Assembly (NCBI RefSeq): GCF_902459465.1
Contig: NC_047075.1
Location: forward strand, 12,896,001 to 12,960,000
Reading direction: 5' to 3'
DNA length: 64,000 bases
From: Asterias rubens
Lineage: Eukaryota
In this document: one piece after another, positions 17,942-31,000 of the stretch
Numbering within the stretch: the stretch's first letter is position 1
How the letters are laid out: every line of letters begins with the position of its first letter
Program-made: the position numbers and the translations under genes
Notes under the pieces: model-generated
What the model was told of the DNA's origin: nothing
Database searches by the model: none
Seen by the model: only the letters and a program-made list of their open reading frames with translations

Positions 17942-20900
17942 TTACAATGTCTTAAACTCAACTTTTATAGCTTCATGATAACTATAGTATGTTGGCCTAA
18001 CTGTAGCTACAATGCTGTCTATACCTCTGACATACACATGATCAATTAATGTGGCATTCTCTGTTGTTGCATCTGTTACATATTGCTTGTATCCATGCTC
18101 TATCATTAATTTCTCAATATGTGAATGATCATTATAAATATTTTCATTAAAATCTCCCATCACTATACATCTATTACTCATCTTGTTGATTTCATCAATT
18201 AATTTGTTTACATTCTCAATGAAATATTGCATTTTATAAGTGGGGGGTCGGTAGATGACAGCCACTATCACTGAAATATCAGATATTATATGAAACGCAA
18301 TGTACTCTAGATTCTGAACTGCAACATTCAAACGACTGAAGTTTTTATCTCTTTTGCCATACACTGCAACTCCTCCATGACTTTGCTGCTGTAGTGTCTT
18401 CATCTGATCATTGTATGACAAAGCTCTAATTTGGTGGTAACATTTGAAATCATCTAAACTGACATTTATAATTTGATCAGCATCTATCCATGTTTCTGTA
18501 AGGCAGATAAAATCTGAATCCATCATTTCTTTTTGACATTTCAAATCTTTATAATGAGGTAATAATCCCTGAATATTATGCAGTATTATTTCTGTTGTAT
18601 CTTTCTGAGTGTTGTTTTCATCATTCACATATTCCTCAATTCCTCTCACTGCAGGCATTATCTTTAGAGCTTCTGCTACCGATTTATCACAGTATATCAA
18701 CTTCTCATCAAAACCTTCAATAACAAGACCCTTTAATGATGTCACACGACTCAAACTCACATATGCTTGACCTGCTGAAAATGTTCGTTCAAGACACACT
18801 ACAGCTTTATTTGTTGTCATACCTTGTACTTTATGTGCAGTACACGCCCAAGCTAGTTTTAATGGAAATTGTTTACGGATACACGACTTCCTAATATGTT
18901 CTTCTTGTATCTCAATAGCAACATTAGTATTTACATCAGATGAGGTTGATTGTCTTCTTAATTTAGAACCAACATTCTTATTATCAAATGTTACATTGAT
19001 ATACTTTGGCCCAGATTGATCTGGTAGCATCTCTATTCCATTTACAACTGCAAATGCTCCATTCACAAGTCCATCAGATACATCTATATTTTTAGTCAGC
19101 ATAACTCTAGCACCAATGCCTAATAATAATGACTGACATAAAGAATTTGATCTTACTGATTTCAAAGGTGTGTCTCTCAGTTTCATATTTCCAGCTGCAT
19201 CTTTCTGATAATCTTTAGCTTCAATCAATATACATTCTGTACAAGTTTTATGAATTCTTTGTAGATTATATTTATCAACTTGTTTATTTGTTGGATAGAT
19301 GTGTAAAGCATCTTCAATATCCTCTCCAGTTTCACAACTACTGAGTACAGCTTTATCTTCTGCTGTTAAAGTGTCCTTCTTTGTTTTAACCCTCAATTTA
19401 TTTAACACTTCAGTAAAAGCTACGTCATTCTTTTGTCTCATTATTTCTATTAACTCAATTTTCCTAAAATTTGCATGCCACAAATTGGATTCTATTGTAT
19501 TGTGATGCAATGATTTTCCTTTAACCGGAGGTAGCTGATAAAAATCACCAACAGCAATTACACTCACATCACCAAAGGCACATTGACTTCTAGTTTGCTT
19601 AATCTGTCTTAATCTTCCATGAATATAGCACAGCATCTTTTGATCAACCATAGAAACCTCATCAATAATTACAATTTGAAGCTGGTTCAATTTGTTGCGC
19701 AAAGTGCTGATTTTTTCTTCACCAAGTGGTTTATATGGTAGTGACATATCAGTACCAATGCTGAGAGCAGAATGTATTGTAAGGCCATTGATATTAAATG
19801 CTGCGACACCAGTTGGGGCTGTTAAGATTACAGATACATCATCAGGATTATGACTCATTCTACCAAGTAAACGTACAGCTTCATTATATATACATTTAAT
19901 TAAGTGAGATTTGCCTGTACCAGCTCCTCCAGTTATGAACATATGAAATGGTTCAGGATTCTTTCCATTGACTTTATCAAGACACCATTGTCTAATTTTA
20001 TAGAATATTTGACTCTGTTTGGCATTTAATAACCTCATCAAAGTTTGCGCTTCATGTCTTTGGATTTTGGCTTTATTGTATTCAATACAATAATTTCTGT
20101 CTTCTTTTTTATTGGATTGTAAATCAGGAATACCACACTCATCTACTTTGTCTTCTACATTTTGATTCATTTCATCTATACATTCTTGTCTTTCTGCTTC
20201 AGTCTCTGGACAAATCATTGCCCATGCATCTTCCTGAGGACCAAACTTTGCCAAGTATTCTTCAGCTACATCTACTGCATCACTGTCTGCTTCAAACTTC
20301 TTACGATTACTATCCACAACAAACTTCACAGATACTATATTACACTGATCAAATTTTACACTTCCATTTTGATAAAAATCTGTGAAAGTTTCAAAGGGTG
20401 CAGGTTTCAAATGCTTATCAACACGATGTGGCAGGAACAGTTGTAGGATGCTATGGTAGTATTTCTCTGGACTCTTTATTGCATTAAATCTTGGATACTT
20501 TATAACTGCACCATCAGTTCTAGTACGCTTCTGTATATATCCTAAACTGTTCTGTAATTGATGAACATGTTCATATGTTTTTCCACTGTGGACCTTTAAT
20601 GCTTCTGTACTTGACAATATTCTGTACTCAGAGAAAAATGTAGCGAGACACATTACAGCAAATTCATGTGTTTTAGGTCTGGCTTTATATCTATCTAATT
20701 TACAAATCATCCATACGTTATCATCATCACCATTTGATTTGTTCTGAATCAATCTGAGTGGTAAACTCATTCTAACAAGGTTCTCTCCTAATGGTATAAA
20801 TTCAACTTTCCTTGATCCTTCTTTCAACCTCAAGTTGCACACTCGAAAACATGCCTCTTGTGCTGAAACTTCTCTATTTTGTAAATACACTTGTCCTATA

Positions 20901-23701
20901 GTTTTCATGCTTTGCTTTGCATCACCATGCAGTCCTTCACTTTGAGCTTGACTGAGCAATAATCCCATCTCACGTTCTGCTTTTGAGATATAAGATGCAA
21001 CATATGCTACAGCCCCATAAACATCAGTAATATATTGAATATCTAGATTCGCATTCCATGCTTTTGATAAGTCTGAATTATACTGGTTTACCCATACATC
21101 CTGAGGATTACGTTTCAATATGATACTGTCTTTCTTAGTCATAAGTTGATTTGCCTTCTCAAAGTCTCTTTGATTAATTTCGAGACTGTCAAACATTTCA
21201 TATACTGAATTATATGTCTTCTCTTTATTAAGTAGCGCTTCACGTACCAGTTTAAGCAGTTTCTTTGCCTTTTCAATATCACAAGGTCTATCACCATCTT
21301 CATTATTGATAATGTCATCATTACCCGAGACTTCATCATCTGTACATGTAGGTTCATGTCTTATCACAAATGTTCTCTCAGAAGGAGGTCTTGGGAAGTT
21401 AAAACTGCATTCAGTTCCTTTCTTCTTGCAACTTTTAGAATGTCTTCTACTATGCATTTGTACATTGGATATTATTTCATTCAACTCTTCATCATCTTCT
21501 TTAGCTGGTAATTTACAAGATACATATCTATCAATAAACTGAACAACCTTGTCATCATCATTGTCACTTAGTGTAGGAGCATCTTCAATCCAGAACAAAC
21601 AATGTGTATGAGGAGAACCTCTCATCTGAAACTCAACTCTGTAAAAGTAGTCTTTGACCTTTCCAATAGGATTAGCTTCTGACATGATCACCTCTTTCAA
21701 AAACATATAAAATCTTCTATCAAATATTCTGGCCACAGTGACAGGGTTACTCTTCAGTATCATACATTTATCATTCCAATCTAATTCCTCTATTGTCCTT
21801 GAATCTCCTTGTTGTTTCAGTATGGTGTTAATGACTTCAGGCCATCTCATATCAGCAGCAGAAAATGAACAGAACCATGTTGGTTTACCAAGTTGTCTAA
21901 TCATTGCTAATACATCTTTATGAGCTGATTGCCAATATGGTGGAGTTCCTCTTATTGGTTTTAAGAACTTGTAACCACTATCAGATTTCAAAATGTTTCT
22001 CAATTTGTCCTTATCATTCAGCATTGATGCAGTTAAACTCTGTCCAGCTTGTGTTTTGACATAACCTTTACGAAGAGCAATAGATACACAGTGTAGAACT
22101 TGTTCAATCTCAGACATGTACTGAGCATAGAAAATATAATCTGTATTTTTAGCAAATCTGTTGTCTACATTCATTAATCTATTATGCAGATATCTACAAA
22201 GTGTTATTCTGATATCCCGTTTGTCTTTGAATAACGGACTGCCATTGGGAAATAATGTTGGAAAGCATTTGGCTTCATTTCCTTCTTCCATTAAGACTCT
22301 TACAGGATTATTGCCTTCACACGGAGCTACACAAAATATACCATCAAAATATTGGTCTAAAATCTCTTGCCCGATGTCTAACGGTTCCATGCAACTATCA
22401 AGCTGTGCTCCACATAACCTTTCCTCATCAGTAATCTCTTCACTAATGTCATCTTCTGTTACATTTTCTGCCTGCTCATTTTCACTAATATCTTCAGTTG
22501 ACACTTCCGGTATAGGATTAACCCAATCATGTTCAATTACAATGTCCTTATACCATGTATTATTCTCCTTTAAATAATGCAAAGCTTCTTCAACATGTTG
22601 TTTATTCACATATTTATATTCATAATAACCTTTGTATGACAATTTGCGCTTTAACTTGATTTTTATTAGTTCATTTTCTCCACTTCTTGGTAATGACTGT
22701 ACAGATCTTTCAACATTTGCTGGTACACAAACACAAGGTCCCACTATTCCATTCTGACCACCTTTAGGAAGATTAACAATTTTCATAAATGCTATATTTC
22801 TAGCTATTAGATGCTGCTCTAATGTATTAAGTCTTTGTAATTCTTCAGGAATTTCTGTCAGCGATAAGTTGTTAAGATTTGCCTCTTCTGGTATTCTGTT
22901 TTTAATCAACTTTCTATGACAAGTGTAACAAATCCACAAACAAGATCTTACTTCTGACATGTCACATGTTTTTGCATTACATTCTTCATTACATTGATGC
23001 AGGTATTTTTCTGTTATGTATCCTGAAAGTTTGTATTTATTCTTGTTACATTTGACCACTTGGTTTTTGAAGAGCAATTTGCAACAAACAGCACAAATAT
23101 AACCTGGCCCATGCCTCATTTTGTCTTTAAAATCATTGATTACATTACATGCTTTTTGTCTGTTTTCCTTCTTTAAAACTCTTTGTTGTGAAGTGTTGAT
23201 GATTGTTTTCTGTTTATATAACACATTTTCATGATAATTCCTTTTAATGTTGTTAATCACCTTATGTTTATAATGTGCATCTTGATATTTCCTTTTTATA
23301 CTTTCAATTAATGATTTCTTATACTTAGAATTGAGACGATATTTCGTTTTAATTCCCAATTTTTTTTTCATCCTATAACATGCATTAGTGTTATACCTTG
23401 TCTTGTCTGCAACTGTTTTGCCCATCTTATAACTACTATTTTCATTGTACTTGATTCGTTTGGCATCTTTGATTTTGTCTTTAGTCTTGTCGTACGCCAT
23501 TCTACTTGCCTTTACCTTTCCTTCTCTACATATTAAATTTTCATTATACTTTGTTTTTTCTGTAGCAATTTTCCTCAGCTTGAAATCAACATTACAACGG
23601 TACCTCATTTGATCCAGTGTATTCCCTGATTGCATTTTCCTGTCATCTATACTGCCTGAATATTTGTGAACAACTGTCTTTTTTTTTCTTCTTTTTTTCA
23701 T
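17942..23701 (-). CDS. Helitron/Helentron RepHel: HUH Rep + PIF1-family helicase + C-terminal AP (EEP) endonuclease
   Basis: Rep motifs PTWFCSFSAAD, VEFQMRGSPHTH (~21600-21635) and YVASYISK (~20981-21004). Helicase GGAGTGKS (~19910-19935), IIDEVSM, GDFYQLPPV, HKVQGMT, YVSLSR. Endonuclease HNIQGL, LTETW, IYRPP, GDFN, LIDHVY, SYH. Confidence 0.95.
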   Translation of the reverse strand: MKKRRKKKTVVHKYSGSIDDRKMQSGNTLDQMRYRCNVDFKLRKIATEKTKYNENLICREGKVKASRMAYDKTKDKIKDAKRIKYNENSSYKMGKTVADKTRYNTNACYRMKKKLGIKTKYRLNSKYKKSLIESIKRKYQDAHYKHKVINNIKRNYHENVLYKQKTIINTSQQRVLKKENRQKACNVINDFKDKMRHGPGYICAVCCKLLFKNQVVKCNKNKYKLSGYITEKYLHQCNEECNAKTCDMSEVRSCLWICYTCHRKLIKNRIPEEANLNNLSLTEIPEELQRLNTLEQHLIARNIAFMKIVNLPKGGQNGIVGPCVCVPANVERSVQSLPRSGENELIKIKLKRKLSYKGYYEYKYVNKQHVEEALHYLKENNTWYKDIVIEHDWVNPIPEVSTEDISENEQAENVTEDDISEEITDEERLCGAQLDSCMEPLDIGQEILDQYFDGIFCVAPCEGNNPVRVLMEEGNEAKCFPTLFPNGSPLFKDKRDIRITLCRYLHNRLMNVDNRFAKNTDYIFYAQYMSEIEQVLHCVSIALRKGYVKTQAGQSLTASMLNDKDKLRNILKSDSGYKFLKPIRGTPPYWQSAHKDVLAMIRQLGKPTWFCSFSAADMRWPEVINTILKQQGDSRTIEELDWNDKCMILKSNPVTVARIFDRRFYMFLKEVIMSEANPIGKVKDYFYRVEFQMRGSPHTHCLFWIEDAPTLSDNDDDKVVQFIDRYVSCKLPAKEDDEELNEIISNVQMHSRRHSKSCKKKGTECSFNFPRPPSERTFVIRHEPTCTDDEVSGNDDIINNEDGDRPCDIEKAKKLLKLVREALLNKEKTYNSVYEMFDSLEINQRDFEKANQLMTKKDSIILKRNPQDVWVNQYNSDLSKAWNANLDIQYITDVYGAVAYVASYISKAEREMGLLLSQAQSEGLHGDAKQSMKTIGQVYLQNREVSAQEACFRVCNLRLKEGSRKVEFIPLGENLVRMSLPLRLIQNKSNGDDDNVWMICKLDRYKARPKTHEFAVMCLATFFSEYRILSSTEALKVHSGKTYEHVHQLQNSLGYIQKRTRTDGAVIKYPRFNAIKSPEKYYHSILQLFLPHRVDKHLKPAPFETFTDFYQNGSVKFDQCNIVSVKFVVDSNRKKFEADSDAVDVAEEYLAKFGPQEDAWAMICPETEAERQECIDEMNQNVEDKVDECGIPDLQSNKKEDRNYCIEYNKAKIQRHEAQTLMRLLNAKQSQIFYKIRQWCLDKVNGKNPEPFHMFITGGAGTGKSHLIKCIYNEAVRLLGRMSHNPDDVSVILTAPTGVAAFNINGLTIHSALSIGTDMSLPYKPLGEEKISTLRNKLNQLQIVIIDEVSMVDQKMLCYIHGRLRQIKQTRSQCAFGDVSVIAVGDFYQLPPVKGKSLHHNTIESNLWHANFRKIELIEIMRQKNDVAFTEVLNKLRVKTKKDTLTAEDKAVLSSCETGEDIEDALHIYPTNKQVDKYNLQRIHKTCTECILIEAKDYQKDAAGNMKLRDTPLKSVRSNSLCQSLLLGIGARVMLTKNIDVSDGLVNGAFAVVNGIEMLPDQSGPKYINVTFDNKNVGSKLRRQSTSSDVNTNVAIEIQEEHIRKSCIRKQFPLKLAWACTAHKVQGMTTNKAVVCLERTFSAGQAYVSLSRVTSLKGLVIEGFDEKLIYCDKSVAEALKIMPAVRGIEEYVNDENNTQKDTTEIILHNIQGLLPHYKDLKCQKEMMDSDFICLTETWIDADQIINVSLDDFKCYHQIRALSYNDQMKTLQQQSHGGVAVYGKRDKNFSRLNVAVQNLEYIAFHIISDISVIVAVIYRPPTYKMQYFIENVNKLIDEINKMSNRCIVMGDFNENIYNDHSHIEKLMIEHGYKQYVTDATTENATLIDHVYVRGIDSIVATVRPTYYSYHEAIKVEFKTL

Positions 23702-26700
23702 TGTATTTCATTCGTTTATTATCTCTATCTTTTTTCCTTATCATAGCTGCACTCATTTTTCGTTTTGGTTTTCTCCCCTTGGTCTTTTTACTCCTTTGAT
23801 CATCATCTTGGATCTGTTCATTACATCTAATACATTCATTGATATTTATATTGTCATCAGTTGTCAAACTATCTACATCCATATTCTGTATTACTTCTGT
23901 TTCTTCACCCTGATCATTTATTATCAAATCATTAGGATTTGTTTCCATTGGTAATATGTGCACTGACAACACAACATCATAATGTACACCATTAGTATGA
24001 TTCAGATAGATTGCTTCATCTGAAGTTACACTTCCAATTTCTGCTATCTTTCCAGAGAATATGTACCATCTACCATTAAAAGTGTATACATCTGTTTCAA
24101 GCATATGTGCAACAGCCATAATCTCTACTTCAGTTGCCCAGACTCCAGAACAAAACATTCTTTGCCTTTGAACATAATCCTGAACATTACTGAATTCTTC
24201 ACGTAAATATGTAGTGTACCGATTGCTACATTTCAACAAATGATTCACAGTAGCTAGCCTCAATCTCATATGGCTACGTTCACTTCCAGAAATTGCAAAT
24301 GAAATAGCTCTGAAAAAACAATTTCCATCACCCTGGATACGTCTTAACTGATTTGGGTGTCCCATTCTGACACAATCTTCAGATACTACAGTTTGTGAGT
24401 ACACTCTATTAATTCCAACTGATTTGCACAAAGACTGCTTGTGGTCATATGACAATGCATTAAACTTAAATACAACTTCCTCAGATATTACAACCATTTC
24501 AATTTCATCACTATCTTCAGTATTCACCTTATCATCTTTCAAGCCATGTTTAGTAGGTCCACCAAATTGATGATCAAAATCACTGGCATTATTAAATGCA
24601 CTTTCCTGATTTGGAATTTCACTCAAGGTTTCATTAGCAACATAACTGATTTCTAAATCATTAAGCTCAGTTGTCTCTCGTTCCTGTTCAATGTCTTCAG
24701 TATCAGCAATAAAGCAATTATTTGTTCCATCATCCTGACAGACAGTCACTCCTGTAACTTCAAATTGTTCATGGTTATTTAAATTCATTGAGTTAGCCAA
24801 TTCAGTACAATACCTGTGAACATCTTGCCATCTCGGTGCACATTTCAAGATACTTGTTCCTTCACTTGTTAGATGACCATTAAAGTTTCTAGAATGAGAA
24901 TCAAAGATATAGTACATACTATTGTGAGAAATAACACAAAATGTGTTTTCATTAAAACATATGAAACAACCTATATATTTCTGCAATGTTTGCTCAAGAG
25001 CTCTATCCAGCTGCATCATATTAAATTCTGACAAATGTCCATCATCATCAAACATACCACTCACTGATTCATGATAAATCATACTAAAGCTCTTGTTGAA
25101 TACAATTAACTGATTGGGTAATTCGTTAATTAACAAATAATCATTATTCATTGTGGAACTGTTTGCTAAATGACCATATAATTCATTGCCAGTATTCAAT
25201 ATCAAATCCATGTCATTGCTAGTCCATTGATTCAAATCTTTAATATGACTGTACATCACAGCACACAAGCTGTTTGCAACACACTGTTTTCCAGTATTTA
25301 CACCAAATTTTAAATTACCTTGATGGAAATGTCCTTGTAAAGCAAAAGTGTTCATCTCTTTCAGCATCACATCTTTCTTCAATTTCTTCTCATTCAACTC
25401 ATCATGGGCAGACACTGACCTCTTTTCTGTTCTGCGCAGTTTGGGGGAATGTTGTTGAACACTGTTATTAACACATTCAAATTCTTTGCTCATTAAACAT
25501 CCAGTATGCTCTATTTTCTTACTAGTGTCTTTTGCACTCTTTGATGGTTGTTTTGTGGCTTTACTTCTCAAAAAGTATCCTCCCCTTTGTTTCTTAATTG
25601 GAACTTCAGTCTTTATCACATTATATTTATTTGTGTCCATGGAACAGTTAACTTCTAATCTATGTTGTTCACAGCTGTCATAAGAATTACTACCACTGTT
25701 GTAAATCTGTTCATTATCTTTGTGAGTAGACATACTAAAATCACATGCCTGGTTCACATTGTCTTCATTTTGGATACACATTGTAATTTCGTACATATTC
25801 ACATCAGCTGGAATTCCATAATCACAGAAAAGAGAATCACAGTAGTTACTTTCCCTGCACTTGCAACATATCCATACACAAGATTTATTTATCAAAATGT
25901 CATTACTCTGTGCAACTCCCATGCATTCAACATGATACCACTTACTGCATTCACACTGTACCTTAGCTTCTAATGATGCAATTATCTTATCACAAAGCCA
26001 ACACTGGTTTTCATTGACATTTGTAATATCAGATTTAAGACTCATTTTTAGTGAGCCATTTCTTGTGTTTTGATTTGAACTTTCACATTTAGGTTTTCTT
26101 ATTTCATATTGTAGCACACATTCTTCAGTTTTCACACGATGATTTTCTTTGGCCTTTTCCACATCTTTCATTGTCTCTACTTCTTTCATTTTCTTCACAA
26201 CATGATCAAGAGTTCTCTTAGTATGGGAGAAAATGCCCTTCTGTGACTTTTCATGCATTCGTCTCTCTTCATTGCTCATACGGCATTCTACAACTTTGCC
26301 ACCTTTCCTGATATTATGACACTTTTTGAATGCTTCTCTTTTTTGTTTCCTTCTGTAACTTCTGGACACTTTCTTTCTCCCTCTTCGTTCAATAACCTCT
26401 TCTACACAATTCAAAACCTTTCCACCTCCACAATGCTGTGTCCAATTATACTTCTTAAGCCATCGTAAACCACTAAGATTACTTACTCTTGAATAGGGAG
26501 TGACTCTCTTTCTTCTCAGTTTACACACTTTCTTTCTTTCTTGGTACTGCAGCTTCCTGTTACGTTCATGCTCAACTTTCTTTAGGTGTTCTTTTCTTGG
26601 TTGCAAAACTCCATCATAATAAACTTTCATTATCTGTTCTATCTCATCATTGTTCTCCATTGAATTCAAATTCAGTAATTTATTGTTCTCAACAATTGTT

Positions 26701-26966
26701 CCAATAACCTGGCTCTTCCCAGGTACCTGGCACATCCCAGGATTTTGATTTGTTCTGATAACCTGGCTCTTCCCAGGTACCTGGCACATCCCAGGATTTT
26801 GATTTGTTCTGATAACCTGGCTCTTCCCAGGTACCTGGCACATCCCAGGATTTTGATTTGTTCTGATAACCTGGCTCTTCCCAGGTACCTGGCACATCCC
26901 AGGATTTTGATTTGTTCTGATAACCTGGCTCTTCCCAGGTACCTGGCACACCCCAGGATTTTGCAT
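23643..26966 (-). CDS. N-terminal part of the Helitron polyprotein: PHD finger, herpes-tegument-like (VTD/C76-type) cysteine protease, OTU protease
   Basis: PHD CWLC..CEC..HVEC..CCKC (~25853-26006). QGHFHQG..KQCVANS..FDSHSR (~24760-25345). IQGDGNCFFRAIS..WATEVEI..HYDVV (~23965-24350). Overlaps the RepHel ORF at an A9 run. Confidence 0.85.
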   Translation of the reverse strand: MQNPGVCQVPGKSQVIRTNQNPGMCQVPGKSQVIRTNQNPGMCQVPGKSQVIRTNQNPGMCQVPGKSQVIRTNQNPGMCQVPGKSQVIGTIVENNKLLNLNSMENNDEIEQIMKVYYDGVLQPRKEHLKKVEHERNRKLQYQERKKVCKLRRKRVTPYSRVSNLSGLRWLKKYNWTQHCGGGKVLNCVEEVIERRGRKKVSRSYRRKQKREAFKKCHNIRKGGKVVECRMSNEERRMHEKSQKGIFSHTKRTLDHVVKKMKEVETMKDVEKAKENHRVKTEECVLQYEIRKPKCESSNQNTRNGSLKMSLKSDITNVNENQCWLCDKIIASLEAKVQCECSKWYHVECMGVAQSNDILINKSCVWICCKCRESNYCDSLFCDYGIPADVNMYEITMCIQNEDNVNQACDFSMSTHKDNEQIYNSGSNSYDSCEQHRLEVNCSMDTNKYNVIKTEVPIKKQRGGYFLRSKATKQPSKSAKDTSKKIEHTGCLMSKEFECVNNSVQQHSPKLRRTEKRSVSAHDELNEKKLKKDVMLKEMNTFALQGHFHQGNLKFGVNTGKQCVANSLCAVMYSHIKDLNQWTSNDMDLILNTGNELYGHLANSSTMNNDYLLINELPNQLIVFNKSFSMIYHESVSGMFDDDGHLSEFNMMQLDRALEQTLQKYIGCFICFNENTFCVISHNSMYYIFDSHSRNFNGHLTSEGTSILKCAPRWQDVHRYCTELANSMNLNNHEQFEVTGVTVCQDDGTNNCFIADTEDIEQERETTELNDLEISYVANETLSEIPNQESAFNNASDFDHQFGGPTKHGLKDDKVNTEDSDEIEMVVISEEVVFKFNALSYDHKQSLCKSVGINRVYSQTVVSEDCVRMGHPNQLRRIQGDGNCFFRAISFAISGSERSHMRLRLATVNHLLKCSNRYTTYLREEFSNVQDYVQRQRMFCSGVWATEVEIMAVAHMLETDVYTFNGRWYIFSGKIAEIGSVTSDEAIYLNHTNGVHYDVVLSVHILPMETNPNDLIINDQGEETEVIQNMDVDSLTTDDNININECIRCNEQIQDDDQRSKKTKGRKPKRKMSAAMIRKKDRDNKRMKYNEKKKKKKDSCSQIFRQYR
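26704..26964. repeat. 54-bp tandem repeat, about 5 near-perfect copies
   Basis: Unit ATAACCTGGCTCTTCCCAGGTACCTGGCACATCCCAGGATTTTGATTTGTTCTG starts at 26704, 26758, 26812, 26866 and 26920. Confidence 0.95.
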
Positions 26967-27869
26967 GTTCCTGTAATTTATTATCTTTGTTTCACAAATT
27001 TTGCTTGTCTTTTTACAAAATATATTTGCTTTGTAAGTTAAGATTCTCTTATTATATTTCTCTGGTTCTCAAGTTCTGATTCTGTAATTATAAATTCTCA
27101 GTTCTGAATTCTCTGGTTATTCAAACTTCTCTTATGTTTCTGAAGTTGTATTCAAAGTTGTCTGTTTCTCAAACTCTGATTCTCTGCTCATTAAAAAAAA
27201 AAATAAAAAATTCTAGTTATCTGATTCTCTCAATATTTAAACTTCACTTTGTTTCTCAAGTTCTAATTTTCTAACTCAAATTCTCTTTTCCTGAAGTCGA
27301 AATTCTCTAAATATTCAATTTTGTTTTTGGAGCTCACTGCCTGATTCTCTGATTATTCAACTTTTTATTGTCTGTTAATTTTTTACTTGTTTTTCAATTT
27401 TTTGTAACTCTTTTTGTTGTGTTTTTGTAGTGTTTATCTTTATAAAAATGTTCAGCAAACTGTATCAAGTCTTCACACTATCACCACCAGTAAACACCCT
27501 GAAATAAAAATGAAAAGAAAAAAAAAAAACAGTTAGTAATATTTAGAAATTTGCCACAATCAACTAGTATCAATGAGAAAATTTGTTTTATTATACAAAT
27601 TCAAGATAATATTTTTTATATTGGTACTCCTTCATATATCTGAACAAAAACCTTGTCCAATCAACTGTGAAGATTGTGATTATCTATGTAGTCTGGCAAA
27701 CTCAGTACATCAGGCCTGGAATTAAATAGAGGTCATCTACTCCTAGAACTAAAAGGCTCATTCCACTATTGTCTCCGTCCATGAATTTTATAGGTTCATT
27801 AACAAAATCCTATTCAACATTTTTCCCCTTGAATTAAAATATTTATGTACCTGTGTTTCTTTTTCAACC

Positions 27870-28012
27870 GGTGTCATAGGGAAATCTGTCCCCCGGAGAT
27901 TCTGTCCCCCATATGGGAAATTAACGTGGGCTGAAGGAGGATGATTCAAAAGAGGGTGCTATCAAAAGCAGTTCGTACAGCCATATGGGGGGACAGAATC
28001 TCCTGCCACACC
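27870..28012. mobile_element. Small MITE
   Basis: Inverted repeats GGAGATTCTGTCCCCCATATGG / CCATATGGGGGGACAGAATCTCC, with outer GGTGT...ACACC. Confidence 0.55.
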
Positions 28013-31000
28013 AGATCTTACCCAAATTAGGCTCTATGTATTCTATGTACATTTACACACAGTAAAGCTCAAGGTGGGCTTAGACAATTTACTCTGCAAA
28101 CAAGATTAATAAAAACAATAAGCTCCCAGCAAATGAGGGGTCTCACCTTCACACTGATAATGAACCAACCTGCTCAGAGATGGTAGCAAAAATGATGTGT
28201 TGATCACTTGCAACAAAATGATCGCCATGAATGATGAAAAACCAGCACGCTGTAGTACACAGGTCATCGCGGGGTCGTCGCAGCTAGCATGATGCAGCGC
28301 CAACCTCGTCCCCAGGGTGTATCGAGCAGTACGAGGGATTGTAAACATGGTTGGAAATAAAGTAAACCATGGGGACGAGGTTGGATGCAGCGCAGCCACT
28401 GATCTCTTCACTAATAACAGAGATCAATGAGCGCAACCTAGCCTGAGCATGCGCATGGAGGAAGGGATAGCATCACATGGCGCATGCATACTCGACAGCC
28501 TCACAAAAGGTGGTCGCGTTTTTGAGATATCGCCGAAAATCCGGTCCGGAGCGAATAATTATATGTCAACACAGGAAGAATCATCCGTAATTGGAATACA
28601 ATCTGAGAAACGTTTTTACAGTAACTTTCTCAGATTCAAGTTTTTGGGGCATATCACTAATATTGTTTTCGATAACTACTAATTACTTGGAAGTGAAATG
28701 TTCCTCAAAATGCTTTATACTATGTATAACTATAATGTAGGAAGTCAAGAAAAAAAGGCTTTCTACTTTATTCATTACAGGAGCAATTAAAAAAAATGCT
28801 AATTGTGCCTTGAAAATCATGGCTCGCCCGCTTACTGCAATGTTTTAAACAAACTGTATAGTTTAATCAGGAATACAAGGCACACGCTCGTCAACACCAA
28901 GGAGCATAGTTGTTATTATTGCGCCCTCTGCCATGTCATATGAATGGCGATTTTCGCGTTGTTTGTTATTGCTGTTCTGTAATATAAACAAAACCCTCTG
29001 CGTGGATGTCGTACATGACAACAAGCAAATTGCTCCCTCCTTAAACAGTACATTAATCCATAGATTGTTGATTTGTCAAAAAATGTGCGATGGGATCGTT
29101 GAGATCCATCTGTGGTCTTTTTGTAACATATACTTTACTCCATGGACAGACGCATAATTGTTGGTCTAATAAGTTTCATTGTTGTTGGTCTTTGAACTGG
29201 TCTCGAGGCCTACCCTCAGTCTTTGATTTTCATACTTCAGTGAAGTGCCTGTATTTTCTTAACACATCCAAGGTGGCTGCTGCCCGCTGTTTGGAAAGTA
29301 TTTGAGGGGCTGATTATAACCCTTGAAGGTTACAAAGGCATATAACAATTCCTGCGTCACTGCAAATAGGCAATTTTGGTTTGTTTTCCATGTTGGTCGC
29401 CATGGACTGTAGTAGTAAGGCTCTGTACGTGCTTGTTGCACAATAGTTTTGAAGTAAAAAGTAGAACAAGACATTGACCTTTAGGCCTACCGTATCAAAT
29501 CTGTAGTATGAGTGCAGACCCGAAAGTGCCATCGCAGATAAAATACATTGTTGTTATCGTTTCAGCCTTGTTCATTGTCAAACATGTATATTTTTAAAAA
29601 GTTTATCTATCTCATGAAATATTGATGTAAACCCGTTTTCAACTGAGCAATTGTGCGCTTCTTTGCTTTGCATCTGAAGTACTTTGCTCATTAATGTTTA
29701 AATTTTAAAACGAATAACCCAAAAATAATTATCATTCTACCATCGTAAGCCACACCTTGAACATTGGCCATGAAAACAATTTTACCATGGATTTGTTTTA
29801 TCCTTGCGCCTACACCTAGACCTACACGAGTATGACGACTTTTGAGGTAATAATATTACATTAGTAGCGGGATAATTTACTGCATTAACTTATGTATGCC
29901 AAATTCAATGACTAAGTGTTCACTAAGAAGACTAAGAGGTGAACTCAAGATTGTGTTTTGATCATGTATTGCGTATTATGGCCATTACACTGAACCTAGT
30001 GTGCGCGTTGAAGACCTACTCATATTGTTTATCTATCATCATCACTCTTTTTCAACAGTAGCTGCATATTAATGAGCGTTTCAATTAACACGCGCCAACG
30101 TACTCAGTGCGCGCTGCGCGTAAAACTATTACTACATAGTTTTTCCAGTACATGCTATTTTTAAACCCAGCTGGCTGGCGCACATCATAATCATTACGAC
30201 GTCCTCGCACCCCTTCCGGCATTGTAAGAACAAGGCAGGCCGGACGGCCGTGTGTGTTCAAAAATGACTTTGCGTGGCTCAAATTTGTCGTTGCTCGTTG
30301 AATTGACGATCTTGGCCAGCTGGGTATTTTTTCTTCTCCTTTTTGGGGGTAAATATATGTAATATGAACACATTTGTAAACGTTTGACTATTAGTGGCAG
30401 TGTACCTTGCGCGCCGAATCGATACCTCGACTGGCTACCAAAAGAATAATAAAATATAATGAAAATATTTTGCCCCGGCATCAAACTTGTGTGGAATGTA
30501 ATAAGATGTGATATTAGTGTGAGCCCAAATCAAAAAGAAAAGAAACTGGAAAAAATAGCAAGAACGAAGACGAATGTCCTCAATAAATAAATAACTTGAA
30601 AGTGGAAGGATTACATTTTCAAATAATCTCTTTATTGAAAATCTAAATATTTTATAAAACACGATGAACATTCTTCCAAGGGTTATACAACTGCACATGA
30701 TTTACATCTATCGACATCTCTCAGAAAATAGTATAATTATAAATGAATCAATTTTGAATACTTAAGTGTTAACTGCAACAGCGAGACTGATCTGAAAGTG
30801 ATTTTGTGGAGGGTTTATTTTATCACACTTTCAAGATTGTATACAATGGATAGAATTCAAGTGTTTTACCATTTATCGTAGGCCTATGTAGAAGTTTAAT
30901 TACATGTCACATATTGAAAGAAAATGCAGTTTTGTTAGTTCTGATGATGCAATAGTGTGATAAAAAACAGGTCCAGAAATATAAGATCATCAGGTGCCTT

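What the first reader, a model, noticed from the sequence alone, without database searches (positions are those of the whole stretch)
23965..26006. Helitron polyprotein carries two unrelated deubiquitinase-type proteases plus a PHD finger
Seen: PHD, then a herpes large-tegument-like domain with intact Cys (KQCVANS) and Asp-x-His (FDSH), then OTU with intact D-x-x-C (GDGNC) and His (HYD), all upstream of Rep-helicase-endonuclease. Known: OTU and AP-endonuclease modules occur in animal Helitrons/Helentrons, and viral-tegument-like (VTD) DUBs have been reported from fish Helitrons. Inference: the combination suggests a chromatin-reading, dual-DUB module that counters host ubiquitin- or NEDD8-based defence or processes the polyprotein.
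Basis: partly seen in the sequence, partly recalled or inferred. Interest (0 to 1): 0.7.

Follow-up and report, generated by a model that had tools for sequence, protein, structure and literature searches.

The report
Starfish Helentron with PHD and two deubiquitinases
This is a nearly intact rolling-circle jumping gene (Helentron) of a starfish whose protein carries a zinc finger of the PHD type and two different ubiquitin-removing protease domains; the protease pair is already published for such elements, so only the added PHD finger is mildly new.

Summary
On the minus strand, ORF1 (26966..23643, 1107 aa) carries three domains.

- **PHD:** a C4HC3 PHD-type finger at aa 322-370.
- **VTD:** a herpes-tegument-like protease (Pfam Herpes_teg_N, E 4e-11). 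Its model matches the zebrafish Helitron VTD structure 8add (TM 0.83) and MCMV M48.
- **OTU:** an OTU protease (E 2e-10).

All catalytic residues are intact. ORF2 (23701..17942, 1919 aa) encodes DUF6570, Rep, a Pif1 helicase and an AP endonuclease, so the element is a Helentron. It is not one continuous polyprotein here. The two ORFs are offset by one base inside an A-rich run.

The double deubiquitinase is not new. Erven et al. 2022 (PMC9741609) reported VTDs in Helentrons, 121 of them with OTU as well, and showed VTD activity. My search found the same pair in urchins, scallops, oysters, fish and a tunicate.

The PHD finger is real and conserved in every starfish and urchin copy I examined. 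Between two sister copies its dN/dS is 0.09. It was absent from the non-echinoderm relatives found. Its nearest kin are PHD fingers of non-LTR retrotransposons, where this domain is long known.

An unchecked first-reader note (s1-150573) describes the same architecture in a sister copy 109 kb away.

Verdict: a small variant of a known kind, of low to moderate interest.

The parts
26696..26963 (-). 54-nt tandem repeat, 5 copies, each with an internal palindrome. It forms the first ~90 codons of ORF1 and may be 5' leader rather than coding sequence.
   Evidence: (TRF, 98% matches)
23643..26966 (-). ORF1, 1107 aa: the accessory module (basic block, PHD, VTD, OTU)
26202..26381 (-). Conserved lysine/arginine-rich block (aa 196-255) of unknown role, shared by starfish-type copies
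   Evidence: column conservation 0.5-0.66 against 0.2-0.3 in the flanks
25791..26003 (-). PHD-type C4HC3 zinc finger (ligands C322, C325, C338, C340, H345, C348, C367, C370; invariant W365) with a conserved C-terminal tail to about aa 392
25560..25589 (-). Conserved linear motif Q-x-G-G-Y-x-L-R-x-K (aa 460-469) in the otherwise free-drifting PHD-VTD linker
   Evidence: present in all 9 starfish-type copies that carry the PHD; linker dN/dS 0.95
24852..25346 (-). VTD / Herpes_teg_N cysteine protease domain (aa 541-705). Gln549, Cys562, Asp689 and His691 are invariant in the family.
23958..24371 (-). OTU cysteine protease domain (aa 866-1003). Asp880, Cys883 and His995 are invariant.
23679..23698 (-). 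A-rich run in which ORF1 and ORF2 overlap and are offset by one base. The sister copy has two bases fewer here and is also out of frame.
17942..23701 (-). ORF2, 1919 aa: K-Y repeats, then DUF6570 (22520-22903), HUH Rep (21596-22186), Pif1-type helicase (19040-20029) and AP-type endonuclease (18008-18532)

Best explanation
The stretch is the accessory half of an autonomous Helentron, a Helitron-like rolling-circle transposon of the HLE2 group, in a starfish genome.

The downstream ORF supplies the transposition machinery: a DUF6570 zinc-finger region, an HUH Rep nuclease, a Pif1-type helicase and an AP endonuclease.

The upstream ORF supplies three accessory domains.
1. A PHD-type zinc finger of the kind carried by CR1/L2 non-LTR retrotransposons.
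2. A VTD (herpes-tegument-like, papain-fold) deubiquitinase with an intact Gln/Cys/Asp/His set.
3. An OTU deubiquitinase with an intact Asp/Cys/His set.

Shown here: domain identities, folds, conserved catalytic residues, purifying selection on all three domains, and the same VTD plus OTU module in Helentrons of several animal phyla.

Inferred from the zebrafish Helentron VTDs assayed by Erven et al.: the VTD removes ubiquitin, and perhaps NEDD8, from K48/K63-type conjugates. That would shield the transposase or a host replication factor from ubiquitin-dependent removal.

Inferred only:
- The OTU adds a second linkage preference.
- The PHD finger tethers the protein to chromatin.

In related elements the whole array is one protein. 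In this copy a one-base frame offset in an A-rich run splits it in two.
For: **Element type.**
- Pfam hits for all domains.
- HUH, Y-x3-Y and Walker motifs in ORF2.

**VTD.**
- Best PDB sequence hit is the zebrafish Helitron VTD 8add, E 6e-9, with QC and FDSH aligned.
- 20-sequence alignment has Q, QC and D-x-H invariant.
- AF2 model has pLDDT 90.2.
- Foldseek finds 8add, M48 (2j7q), 8adc and 8adb as the only matches at E <= 1e-3.

**OTU.**
- Family profile against OTUD1 4bop gives E 5e-15 over the whole domain, with DGNC and HYD aligned.

**PHD.**
- All 8 zinc ligands are invariant in 9 copies.
- All 54 PDB profile hits are PHD fingers.
- 8 of 9 copies hit Pfam PHD.

**Selection** between the window copy and its sister copy: dN/dS is 0.09 for PHD, 0.12 for VTD, 0.21 for OTU and 0.95 for the linker.

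**Relatives.**
- VTD+OTU with DUF6570, many also with Rep, sit in one protein in scallops, oysters, fish and a tunicate.
- At least 9 PHD-bearing copies exist in this genome. Seven lie within about 1 kb of a VTD.

**Literature.** Erven 2022 and HELIANO 2024.
Against: - No enzymatic or binding activity was or could be tested here.
- ORF1 and ORF2 are out of frame in this copy and in its sister copy. This copy may therefore not make the full protein.
- Element ends were not found.
- Structure comparison cannot separate PHD from RING for the finger. The best hit is Pygo PHD at Z 4.9, with RINGs at Z 4.6 and below.
- The tryptophan that lines the methyl-lysine cage in BPTF-type PHDs varies in the family: W, F, L, V or H.
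- OTU domains of Helentrons have never been assayed (PMC9741609).
Confidence: 0.85

Rival explanations
1. The protease domains mainly process the element's own long protein. They would cut after the conserved Q-x-G-G motif between PHD and VTD to release the finger-bearing N-terminal piece, as many viral deubiquitinase-type proteases do with polyproteins.
For: - A Q-x-G-G-Y-x-L-R-x-K motif is kept in all 9 starfish-type copies that carry the PHD, inside a linker that otherwise drifts freely.
- Viral DUBs often cleave after Gly-Gly (PMC9741609 introduction).
Against: - The motif is absent from the sea-urchin, mollusc, fish and tunicate relatives, which keep both proteases.
- Residues after the Gly-Gly are as conserved as those before it, which fits a binding motif better than a cleavage site.
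- Only Gln at P4 is kept, and P3 varies.
- Assayed Helentron VTDs behave as true isopeptidases.
Confidence: 0.1
2. The zinc finger is not a histone reader. It would act as a RING-like ubiquitin or SUMO ligase adaptor, or as a nucleic-acid or protein docking finger, giving a ubiquitin-editing module rather than a chromatin-tethered one.
For: - Structure searches return RING and PHD cross-brace fingers with similar scores.
- The cage tryptophan is not conserved.
- The function of the related LINE PHD fingers has never been tested (PMC4120745).
Against: - The ligand order is C4HC3, which is PHD, not C3HC4.
- The invariant Trp two residues before the seventh ligand is a PHD signature.
- All 54 significant PDB profile hits, and the Pfam hits of 8 of 9 copies, are PHD.
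- No RING or RING-CH family passed a threshold.
Confidence: 0.1
3. The PHD finger is a recently captured passenger fragment with no role in the element.
For: - Helitron-like elements capture host sequences often (PMC11417382).
- The finger is missing from non-echinoderm relatives.
Against: - It is present at the same position in starfish copies whose VTDs are only 47-69% identical to this one, and in sea-urchin elements.
- All zinc ligands are invariant.
- dN/dS is 0.09, against 0.95 in the adjacent linker.
Confidence: 0.05
4. The region is a domesticated host gene rather than part of a mobile element.
For: Insects carry domesticated, inactive VTD genes (PMC9741609).
Against: - The region is directly followed by an intact 1919-aa Rep-helicase-endonuclease ORF.
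- The genome holds about ten copies in various states of decay, with unrelated flanks.
- All catalytic residues are kept.
Confidence: 0.03

Closest known systems
Zebrafish Helentron DrT2 (VTD + OTU) and DrT1 (two VTDs), Erven et al. 2022, PMC9741609; structure 8add
   Same: - Helentron with a VTD upstream of Rep-helicase-AP endonuclease.
- Same VTD fold (TM 0.83 to 8add) and the same Gln/Cys/Asp/His set.
- OTU follows the VTD, as in DrT2.
- One starfish copy even has two VTDs, as in DrT1.
   Different: - Only about 21-30% identity.
- Echinoderm host, a phylum not named in that paper.
- Carries an N-terminal PHD finger, a basic block and a Q-x-G-G-Y motif that the fish relatives found here lack.
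- This copy is split by a frame offset.
Herpesvirus large tegument protein N-terminal deubiquitinase (MCMV M48, HSV UL36, EBV BPLF1; peptidase family C76)
   Same: - Pfam Herpes_teg_N membership.
- Papain-like fold (2j7q, E 9e-9, TM 0.70-0.74).
- Catalytic Cys and the Asp-x-His motif.
   Different: - About 13% identity.
- Encoded by a transposon, not a virion protein.
- Joined to OTU, PHD and a transposase rather than to a capsid-binding tegument protein.
PHD fingers of CR1/L2 non-LTR retrotransposons (ORF1 or N-terminus of the single ORF), PMC4120745
   Same: - Nearest kin of this finger in a search of 1.84 billion proteins are proteins with a 2A-like NPGP motif, a PHD and an AP endonuclease.
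- They share the C-x2-C-G-x-x-N-[FY] tail.
- Same best structural templates: Pygopus, MLL, PHF8.
- The region 5' of the finger is repetitive in both.
   Different: Here the finger sits on a DNA rolling-circle transposon, next to two deubiquitinases instead of an RNA-binding or endonuclease-RT module.
Cellular OTU deubiquitinases OTUD1/OTUD3/OTUD5
   Same: Whole-domain profile match (E 5e-15 to 3e-12) with the catalytic DGNC and HYD motifs aligned.
   Different: Transposon-borne. No UIM or other ubiquitin-binding extension was seen. Activity of Helentron OTUs is untested.

Membership tests
Helentron (HLE2 rolling-circle transposon) | HUH Rep domain fused to a Pif1-type SF1 helicase | tested here: met
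   Helitron_like_N E 9.8e-35 and PIF1 E 9e-28. H-T-H, Y-x3-Y and Walker A/B motifs are present.
Helentron (HLE2 rolling-circle transposon) | [quoted passage not shown] | tested here: met
   Exo_endo_phos E 1.2e-8 at ORF2 aa 1724-1898. DUF6570 E 1.7e-22. DUF6570 is named as an HLE2 marker in PMC11417382.
Helentron (HLE2 rolling-circle transposon) | Defined ends: subterminal inverted repeats, a 3' palindrome, insertion in T-rich sites | tested here: inconclusive
   The only close copy is cut by a contig end on the 3' side and dissolves into degenerate repeats on the 5' side. No convincing terminal repeats were found.
VTD / Herpes_teg_N (peptidase C76) | Sequence membership above the curated threshold | tested here: met
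   PF04843 scores 43.2 bits against a cut-off of 25. 8add E 6.2e-9.
VTD / Herpes_teg_N (peptidase C76) | Catalytic Cys, Asp-x-His and oxyanion Gln | tested here: met
   Q549, C562, D689 and H691 are invariant in 20 sequences and align to the same motifs of 8add.
VTD / Herpes_teg_N (peptidase C76) | VTD/M48 papain-like fold | tested here: met
   AF2 pLDDT 90.2, pTM 0.87. Foldseek: 8add TM 0.83, 2j7q TM 0.70-0.74.
VTD / Herpes_teg_N (peptidase C76) | Ubiquitin or NEDD8 isopeptidase activity | not testable with these tools
   Shown only for zebrafish Helentron VTDs (PMC9741609).
OTU deubiquitinase (peptidase C85) | Sequence membership with the catalytic Asp/Cys and His motifs | tested here: met
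   PF02338 scores 41.7 bits against a cut-off of 23.3. D880, C883 and H995 are invariant. Profile against OTUD1 gives E 5e-15 with both motifs aligned.
OTU deubiquitinase (peptidase C85) | Deubiquitinase activity | not testable with these tools
   Helentron OTUs have never been assayed, according to PMC9741609.
PHD finger | C4HC3 ligand pattern with PHD spacing, and Trp before ligand 7 | tested here: met
   All 8 ligands and W365 are invariant in 9 copies.
PHD finger | Pfam PHD (PF00628) above threshold | tested here: inconclusive
   The window copy alone gives no hit at E <= 0.01. Eight of nine family copies hit at E <= 0.01 (best 1.2e-7). One copy passes the gathering score, 25.3 against 24. 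The family profile hits only PHD fingers in the PDB.
PHD finger | Cross-brace two-zinc fold distinct from RING | tested here: inconclusive
   Model pLDDT 72. Pygo PHD is top at Z 4.9, but RINGs score within 1 Z unit.
PHD finger | Histone H3 tail binding | not testable with these tools
   The cage position is W in this copy but varies in the family.

The most novel reading that the evidence does not exclude
The retrotransposon-type PHD finger tethers a two-enzyme deubiquitinase to a particular chromatin state, and that tether steers where this Helentron family lands. This would explain why every chromosome-placed copy of the PHD-VTD family found here lies within one 1.55-Mb stretch (12.46-14.0 Mb) of a single 14.7-Mb scaffold, while VTD-less Helitrons lie on other scaffolds. 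The module would then be a chromatin-guided integration and ubiquitin-erasing device, not just a protein-stabilising accessory.
Probability: 0.08. Interest if true: 0.6.

Novelty: new variant of a known kind. Interest (0 to 1): 0.28.

Why it matters
The finding gives a clean echinoderm example of the published Helentron deubiquitinase module. It also shows that this lineage added a PHD finger of the type carried by CR1/L2 retrotransposons. That is one more case of accessory domains moving between unrelated transposon classes, and it would parallel the AP endonuclease if that domain also came from LINEs. That origin rests on my recollection of the literature and was not checked here.

The three domains are compact and conserved, and their borders are defined. 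They are therefore ready reagents for asking what transposon-borne deubiquitinases and PHD fingers do, which is still unknown. The finding does not open a new category.

Tried and rejected
**1. Programmed frameshift or intron at the ORF1/ORF2 junction: rejected.**
- Breaks in other copies lie at unrelated places: after the VTD, inside the OTU, or within the K-Y repeats.
- Relatives in other phyla have one continuous protein.
- The A-run differs by two bases between the two sister copies, and neither is in frame.
- An assembly error in the homopolymer cannot be excluded.

**2. Element ends: not resolved.**
- The 3' flank is single-copy.
- The 5' flank holds only an unrelated high-copy ~150-bp repeat.
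- Inverted-repeat scans gave no convincing termini.

**3. Word search with the PHD-linker region alone (aa 300-480): blank**. This says little.

**4. Exact look-up of ORF1 and ORF2 in the protein collection: not present**.

**5. Structure search for the finger:** both Foldseek and VIA-align were indecisive between PHD and RING.

**6. HELIANO supplementary domain table:** not held. That PHD is missing from its list of 20 domains rests on the main text only.

**7. Joined reading of ORF1 and ORF2:** not attempted.
Full report
**What is there**

The window is a starfish scaffold, G000:C15:12896001-12960000. The organism comes from the scan's earlier notes. Two long minus-strand ORFs lie head to tail:
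- ORF1, 26966..23643, 1107 aa.
- ORF2, 23701..17942, 1919 aa.

Pfam finds the following:

| ORF | Domain | Position or E-value |
|---|---|---|
| ORF1 | Herpes_teg_N | aa 548-693, 43.2 bits, cut-off 25 |
| ORF1 | OTU | aa 878-962, 41.7 bits, cut-off 23.3 |
| ORF2 | DUF6570 | E 1.7e-22 |
| ORF2 | Helitron_like_N | E 9.8e-35 |
| ORF2 | PIF1 | E 9e-28 |
| ORF2 | Exo_endo_phos | E 1.2e-8 |

The HUH, Y-x3-Y and Walker motifs are present in ORF2. The element is therefore a Helentron, a Helitron-like element with a C-terminal AP endonuclease. The quoted motifs KQC, FDSH, GDGNC and HYD are all at the expected residues. No N is present in the element.

**The tegument-like protease**

- The best solved relative by sequence is 8add, the crystal structure of a zebrafish Helitron VTD. 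It scores E 6.2e-9, with the Cys and Asp-x-His motifs aligned.
- I aligned 20 copies from starfish, urchin, scallops, oysters, fish and a tunicate. Gln549, Gln561-Cys562, Asp689 and His691 are invariant.
- An AlphaFold model built on that alignment has pLDDT 90.2 and pTM 0.87.
- Its only Foldseek matches at E <= 1e-3 are the VTD structures and M48:
  - 8add: E 6e-12, TM 0.83, rmsd 2.2 Å.
  - MCMV M48 (2j7q): E 9e-9, TM 0.70-0.74.
  - 8adc and 8adb.

**The OTU domain**

A 15-sequence family alignment keeps Asp880, Cys883 and His995 invariant. Its profile matches OTUD1, OTUD5 and OTUD3 over the whole domain, at E 5e-15 to 3e-12. Both catalytic motifs are aligned.

**The finger**

This copy alone is weak against Pfam. 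The evidence that it is nonetheless a PHD finger is as follows.
- The C4HC3 pattern recurs upstream of the VTD in 5 of 6 diverged genomic copies and in 5 echinoderm database proteins.
- All eight ligands, and the Trp before ligand 7, are invariant.
- The family profile finds 54 PDB chains at E <= 0.01, all PHD fingers: INTS12-like 1wev, Pygopus, BPTF, PHF1/MTF2, MLL and TAF3.
- Eight of nine copies hit Pfam PHD, and one passes the gathering score.

Structure comparison shows a cross-brace finger but cannot separate PHD from RING. I call it a PHD-type finger on the sequence evidence. What it binds is open, because the cage tryptophan is W, F, L, V or H across the family.

**One protein or two**

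ORF1 and ORF2 overlap by 59 nt and are offset by one base within an A-rich run at 23679-23698. The only close sister copy lies on contig C24 and is 94-96% identical over 5.3-5.6 kb. It has two bases fewer in the same run and is also out of frame. In more distant copies the breaks lie elsewhere.

In scallops, oysters, fish and a tunicate, VTD, OTU and DUF6570, and in many cases Rep as well, lie in one predicted protein. A starfish relative reads from OTU into the K-Y repeat region that belongs to ORF2 here.

A single multi-domain protein is therefore the family norm. The split here is a lesion or an assembly error in a homopolymer, not a conserved recoding site.

**Selection**

| Region | dN/dS, window copy vs C24 copy |
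|---|---|
| ORF1 overall | 0.34 |
| PHD | 0.09 |
| VTD | 0.12 |
| OTU | 0.21 |
| PHD-VTD linker | 0.95 |

The counts are small: 6 synonymous and 3 non-synonymous changes in the finger. The pattern still shows that all three domains were under constraint while the two lineages diverged.

**Other conserved pieces**

Starfish-type copies also share two further features:
- a basic block at aa 196-255;
- a Q-x-G-G-Y-x-L-R-x-K motif at aa 460-469, in the linker.

Neither has a known role. The Gly-Gly is the only hint for self-processing, and it is missing outside starfish.

**What is already known**

Erven et al. 2022 (PMC9741609) reported the following:
- Most non-viral VTDs sit in Helentron ORFs.
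- 121 of those elements also carry OTU.
- Zebrafish Helentron VTDs cleave ubiquitin, and some NEDD8, preferring K48 and K63 (and K11) chains.
- The authors proposed protection of transposition proteins from degradation.

HELIANO (PMC11417382) lists Herpes_teg_N, OTU, DUF6570 and the endonuclease among recurrent HLE2 domains.

The "two unrelated deubiquitinases" are therefore published. Echinoderms are not named in either paper's main text. Helentron proteins from sea urchin were noted in 2014 (PMC4067079).

**What is new, modestly**

Neither paper mentions a PHD finger. Full-text searches for Helentron or Helitron with PHD found nothing relevant.

I searched the finger profile against 1.84 billion proteins. 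It gave 2017 hits at E <= 1e-3, and the best 150 were listed. They fall into three groups:
- Starfish and urchin Helentron N-termini.
- A large set of proteins with a 2A-like NPGP motif, one to three PHD fingers and an AP endonuclease, from a sea cucumber, a sea slug and mussels. This is the N-terminal layout of non-LTR retrotransposons.
- One protein with a 2A-like motif, three PHD fingers and DUF6570, which is another Helentron-like element with PHD fingers.

Of the best 150 hits, 51 carry an NPGP motif and 71 share the tail after the last Cys pair.

PHD fingers in CR1/L2 LINE ORF1s are well documented. They have the same best templates (Pygopus, MLL, PHF8), and their function is untested (PMC4120745).

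The simplest reading is that an echinoderm Helentron lineage took up a LINE-type PHD finger by domain shuffling. Non-echinoderm relatives found here lack the finger. That sample is only 31 proteins within a limited length range.

**Mechanism, with its status**

- Shown: domain identities, folds, intact catalytic sets, selection, and linkage to a Helentron transposase.
- Inferred from assayed relatives: the VTD is a ubiquitin (perhaps NEDD8) isopeptidase.
- Inferred only:
  - The OTU is active and adds a second specificity.
  - The PHD finger docks the protein on chromatin.
  - The module protects the transposase or a host replication factor from ubiquitin-dependent removal.

**Genome context**

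This genome holds at least 9 PHD-type copies. Seven lie within about 1 kb of a VTD; the copy on C15 at 12.82 Mb and the one on C58 do not. All seven copies on chromosome-scale scaffolds lie on C15 between 12.46 and 14.0 Mb, in mixed orientation. The rest are on the small contigs C24, C58 and C92. Helitrons without a VTD lie on C2, C6 and C11. The 3' flank of this copy is unique, so a recent segmental duplication is unlikely for it. I did not follow this up.

**Verdict**

The functional reading is plausible but inferred. The headline novelty is already in the literature. What remains is a small variant: a LINE-type PHD finger, plus two short conserved motifs, added to the known VTD-OTU Helentron module in echinoderms.

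An unchecked first-reader note of this scan (s1-150573) describes the same architecture in a copy 109 kb beyond the window. That copy appears in my searches at C15:13.07 Mb.

Noticed in passing
G000:C15:12.46-14.0 Mb (window lies inside), plus contigs C24, C58, C92: All seven chromosome-placed copies of the PHD-VTD Helentron family lie within one 1.55-Mb stretch of a 14.7-Mb scaffold, in mixed orientation. Their VTDs are 46-68% identical to this one. Helitrons without a VTD are on other scaffolds.
   Followed up: partly
window 26696-26963 (-): A 54-nt tandem repeat (5 copies, 98% alike), each unit with an internal palindrome around CCAGGTACCTGG, supplies the first ~90 codons of ORF1. The sister copy has a longer array of units about 70% alike. 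A relative (P0001) starts with an unrelated peptide repeat. The first Met after the repeat is residue 103 (nt 26660). Degenerate ~36-nt repeats continue upstream to about 27400.
   Followed up: partly
window 23679-23698 (-): The frame break between ORF1 and ORF2 sits in runs of 7 and 9 A. The sister copy differs by two bases in the same run. Whether this is homopolymer assembly error, mutation or slippage-prone sequence is open.
   Followed up: partly
window 27861-28020: A ~150-bp element with a perfect 16-nt inverted repeat (27895-27910 / 27988-28003) has about 1900 candidate copies in the genome at 80-87% identity. It is probably a MITE inserted just upstream of the Helentron.
   Followed up: no
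window 25560-25589 (-) and 26202-26381 (-): Two conserved pieces have no known family: the Q-x-G-G-Y-x-L-R-x-K motif between PHD and VTD, and a Lys/Arg-rich block N-terminal of the finger. Both are shared by starfish-type copies only.
   Followed up: partly
window about 23220-23570 (-), ORF2 aa 45-160: Irregular K-Y-x-x-N/D repeats fill the stretch between OTU and DUF6570. Much longer, regular versions of the same repeat occur in the oyster, scallop, fish and starfish relatives. No Pfam family covers them.
   Followed up: no
L021:1672-4515:- and L005:397-2550:- (G000:C15:12.464-12.468 Mb): A decayed copy reads PHD-VTD-VTD-OTU. The two VTDs score identically, so it holds an internal duplication of about 1.1 kb. 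This mirrors the two-VTD zebrafish element DrT1.
   Followed up: partly
P0059 (ENA contig, 565 aa): This protein has a 2A-like GDIEVNPGP motif, three PHD fingers and DUF6570. It is a Helentron-like element with PHD fingers and a ribosome-skipping motif but no deubiquitinase in the fragment.
   Followed up: no
P0004 and P0042 (sea-urchin-type elements): Domain order varies between lineages. It is PHD-OTU-VTD-OTU in Lytechinus (P0004), several PHD-like fingers before VTD-OTU in P0042, and OTU before VTD in scallops.
   Followed up: no
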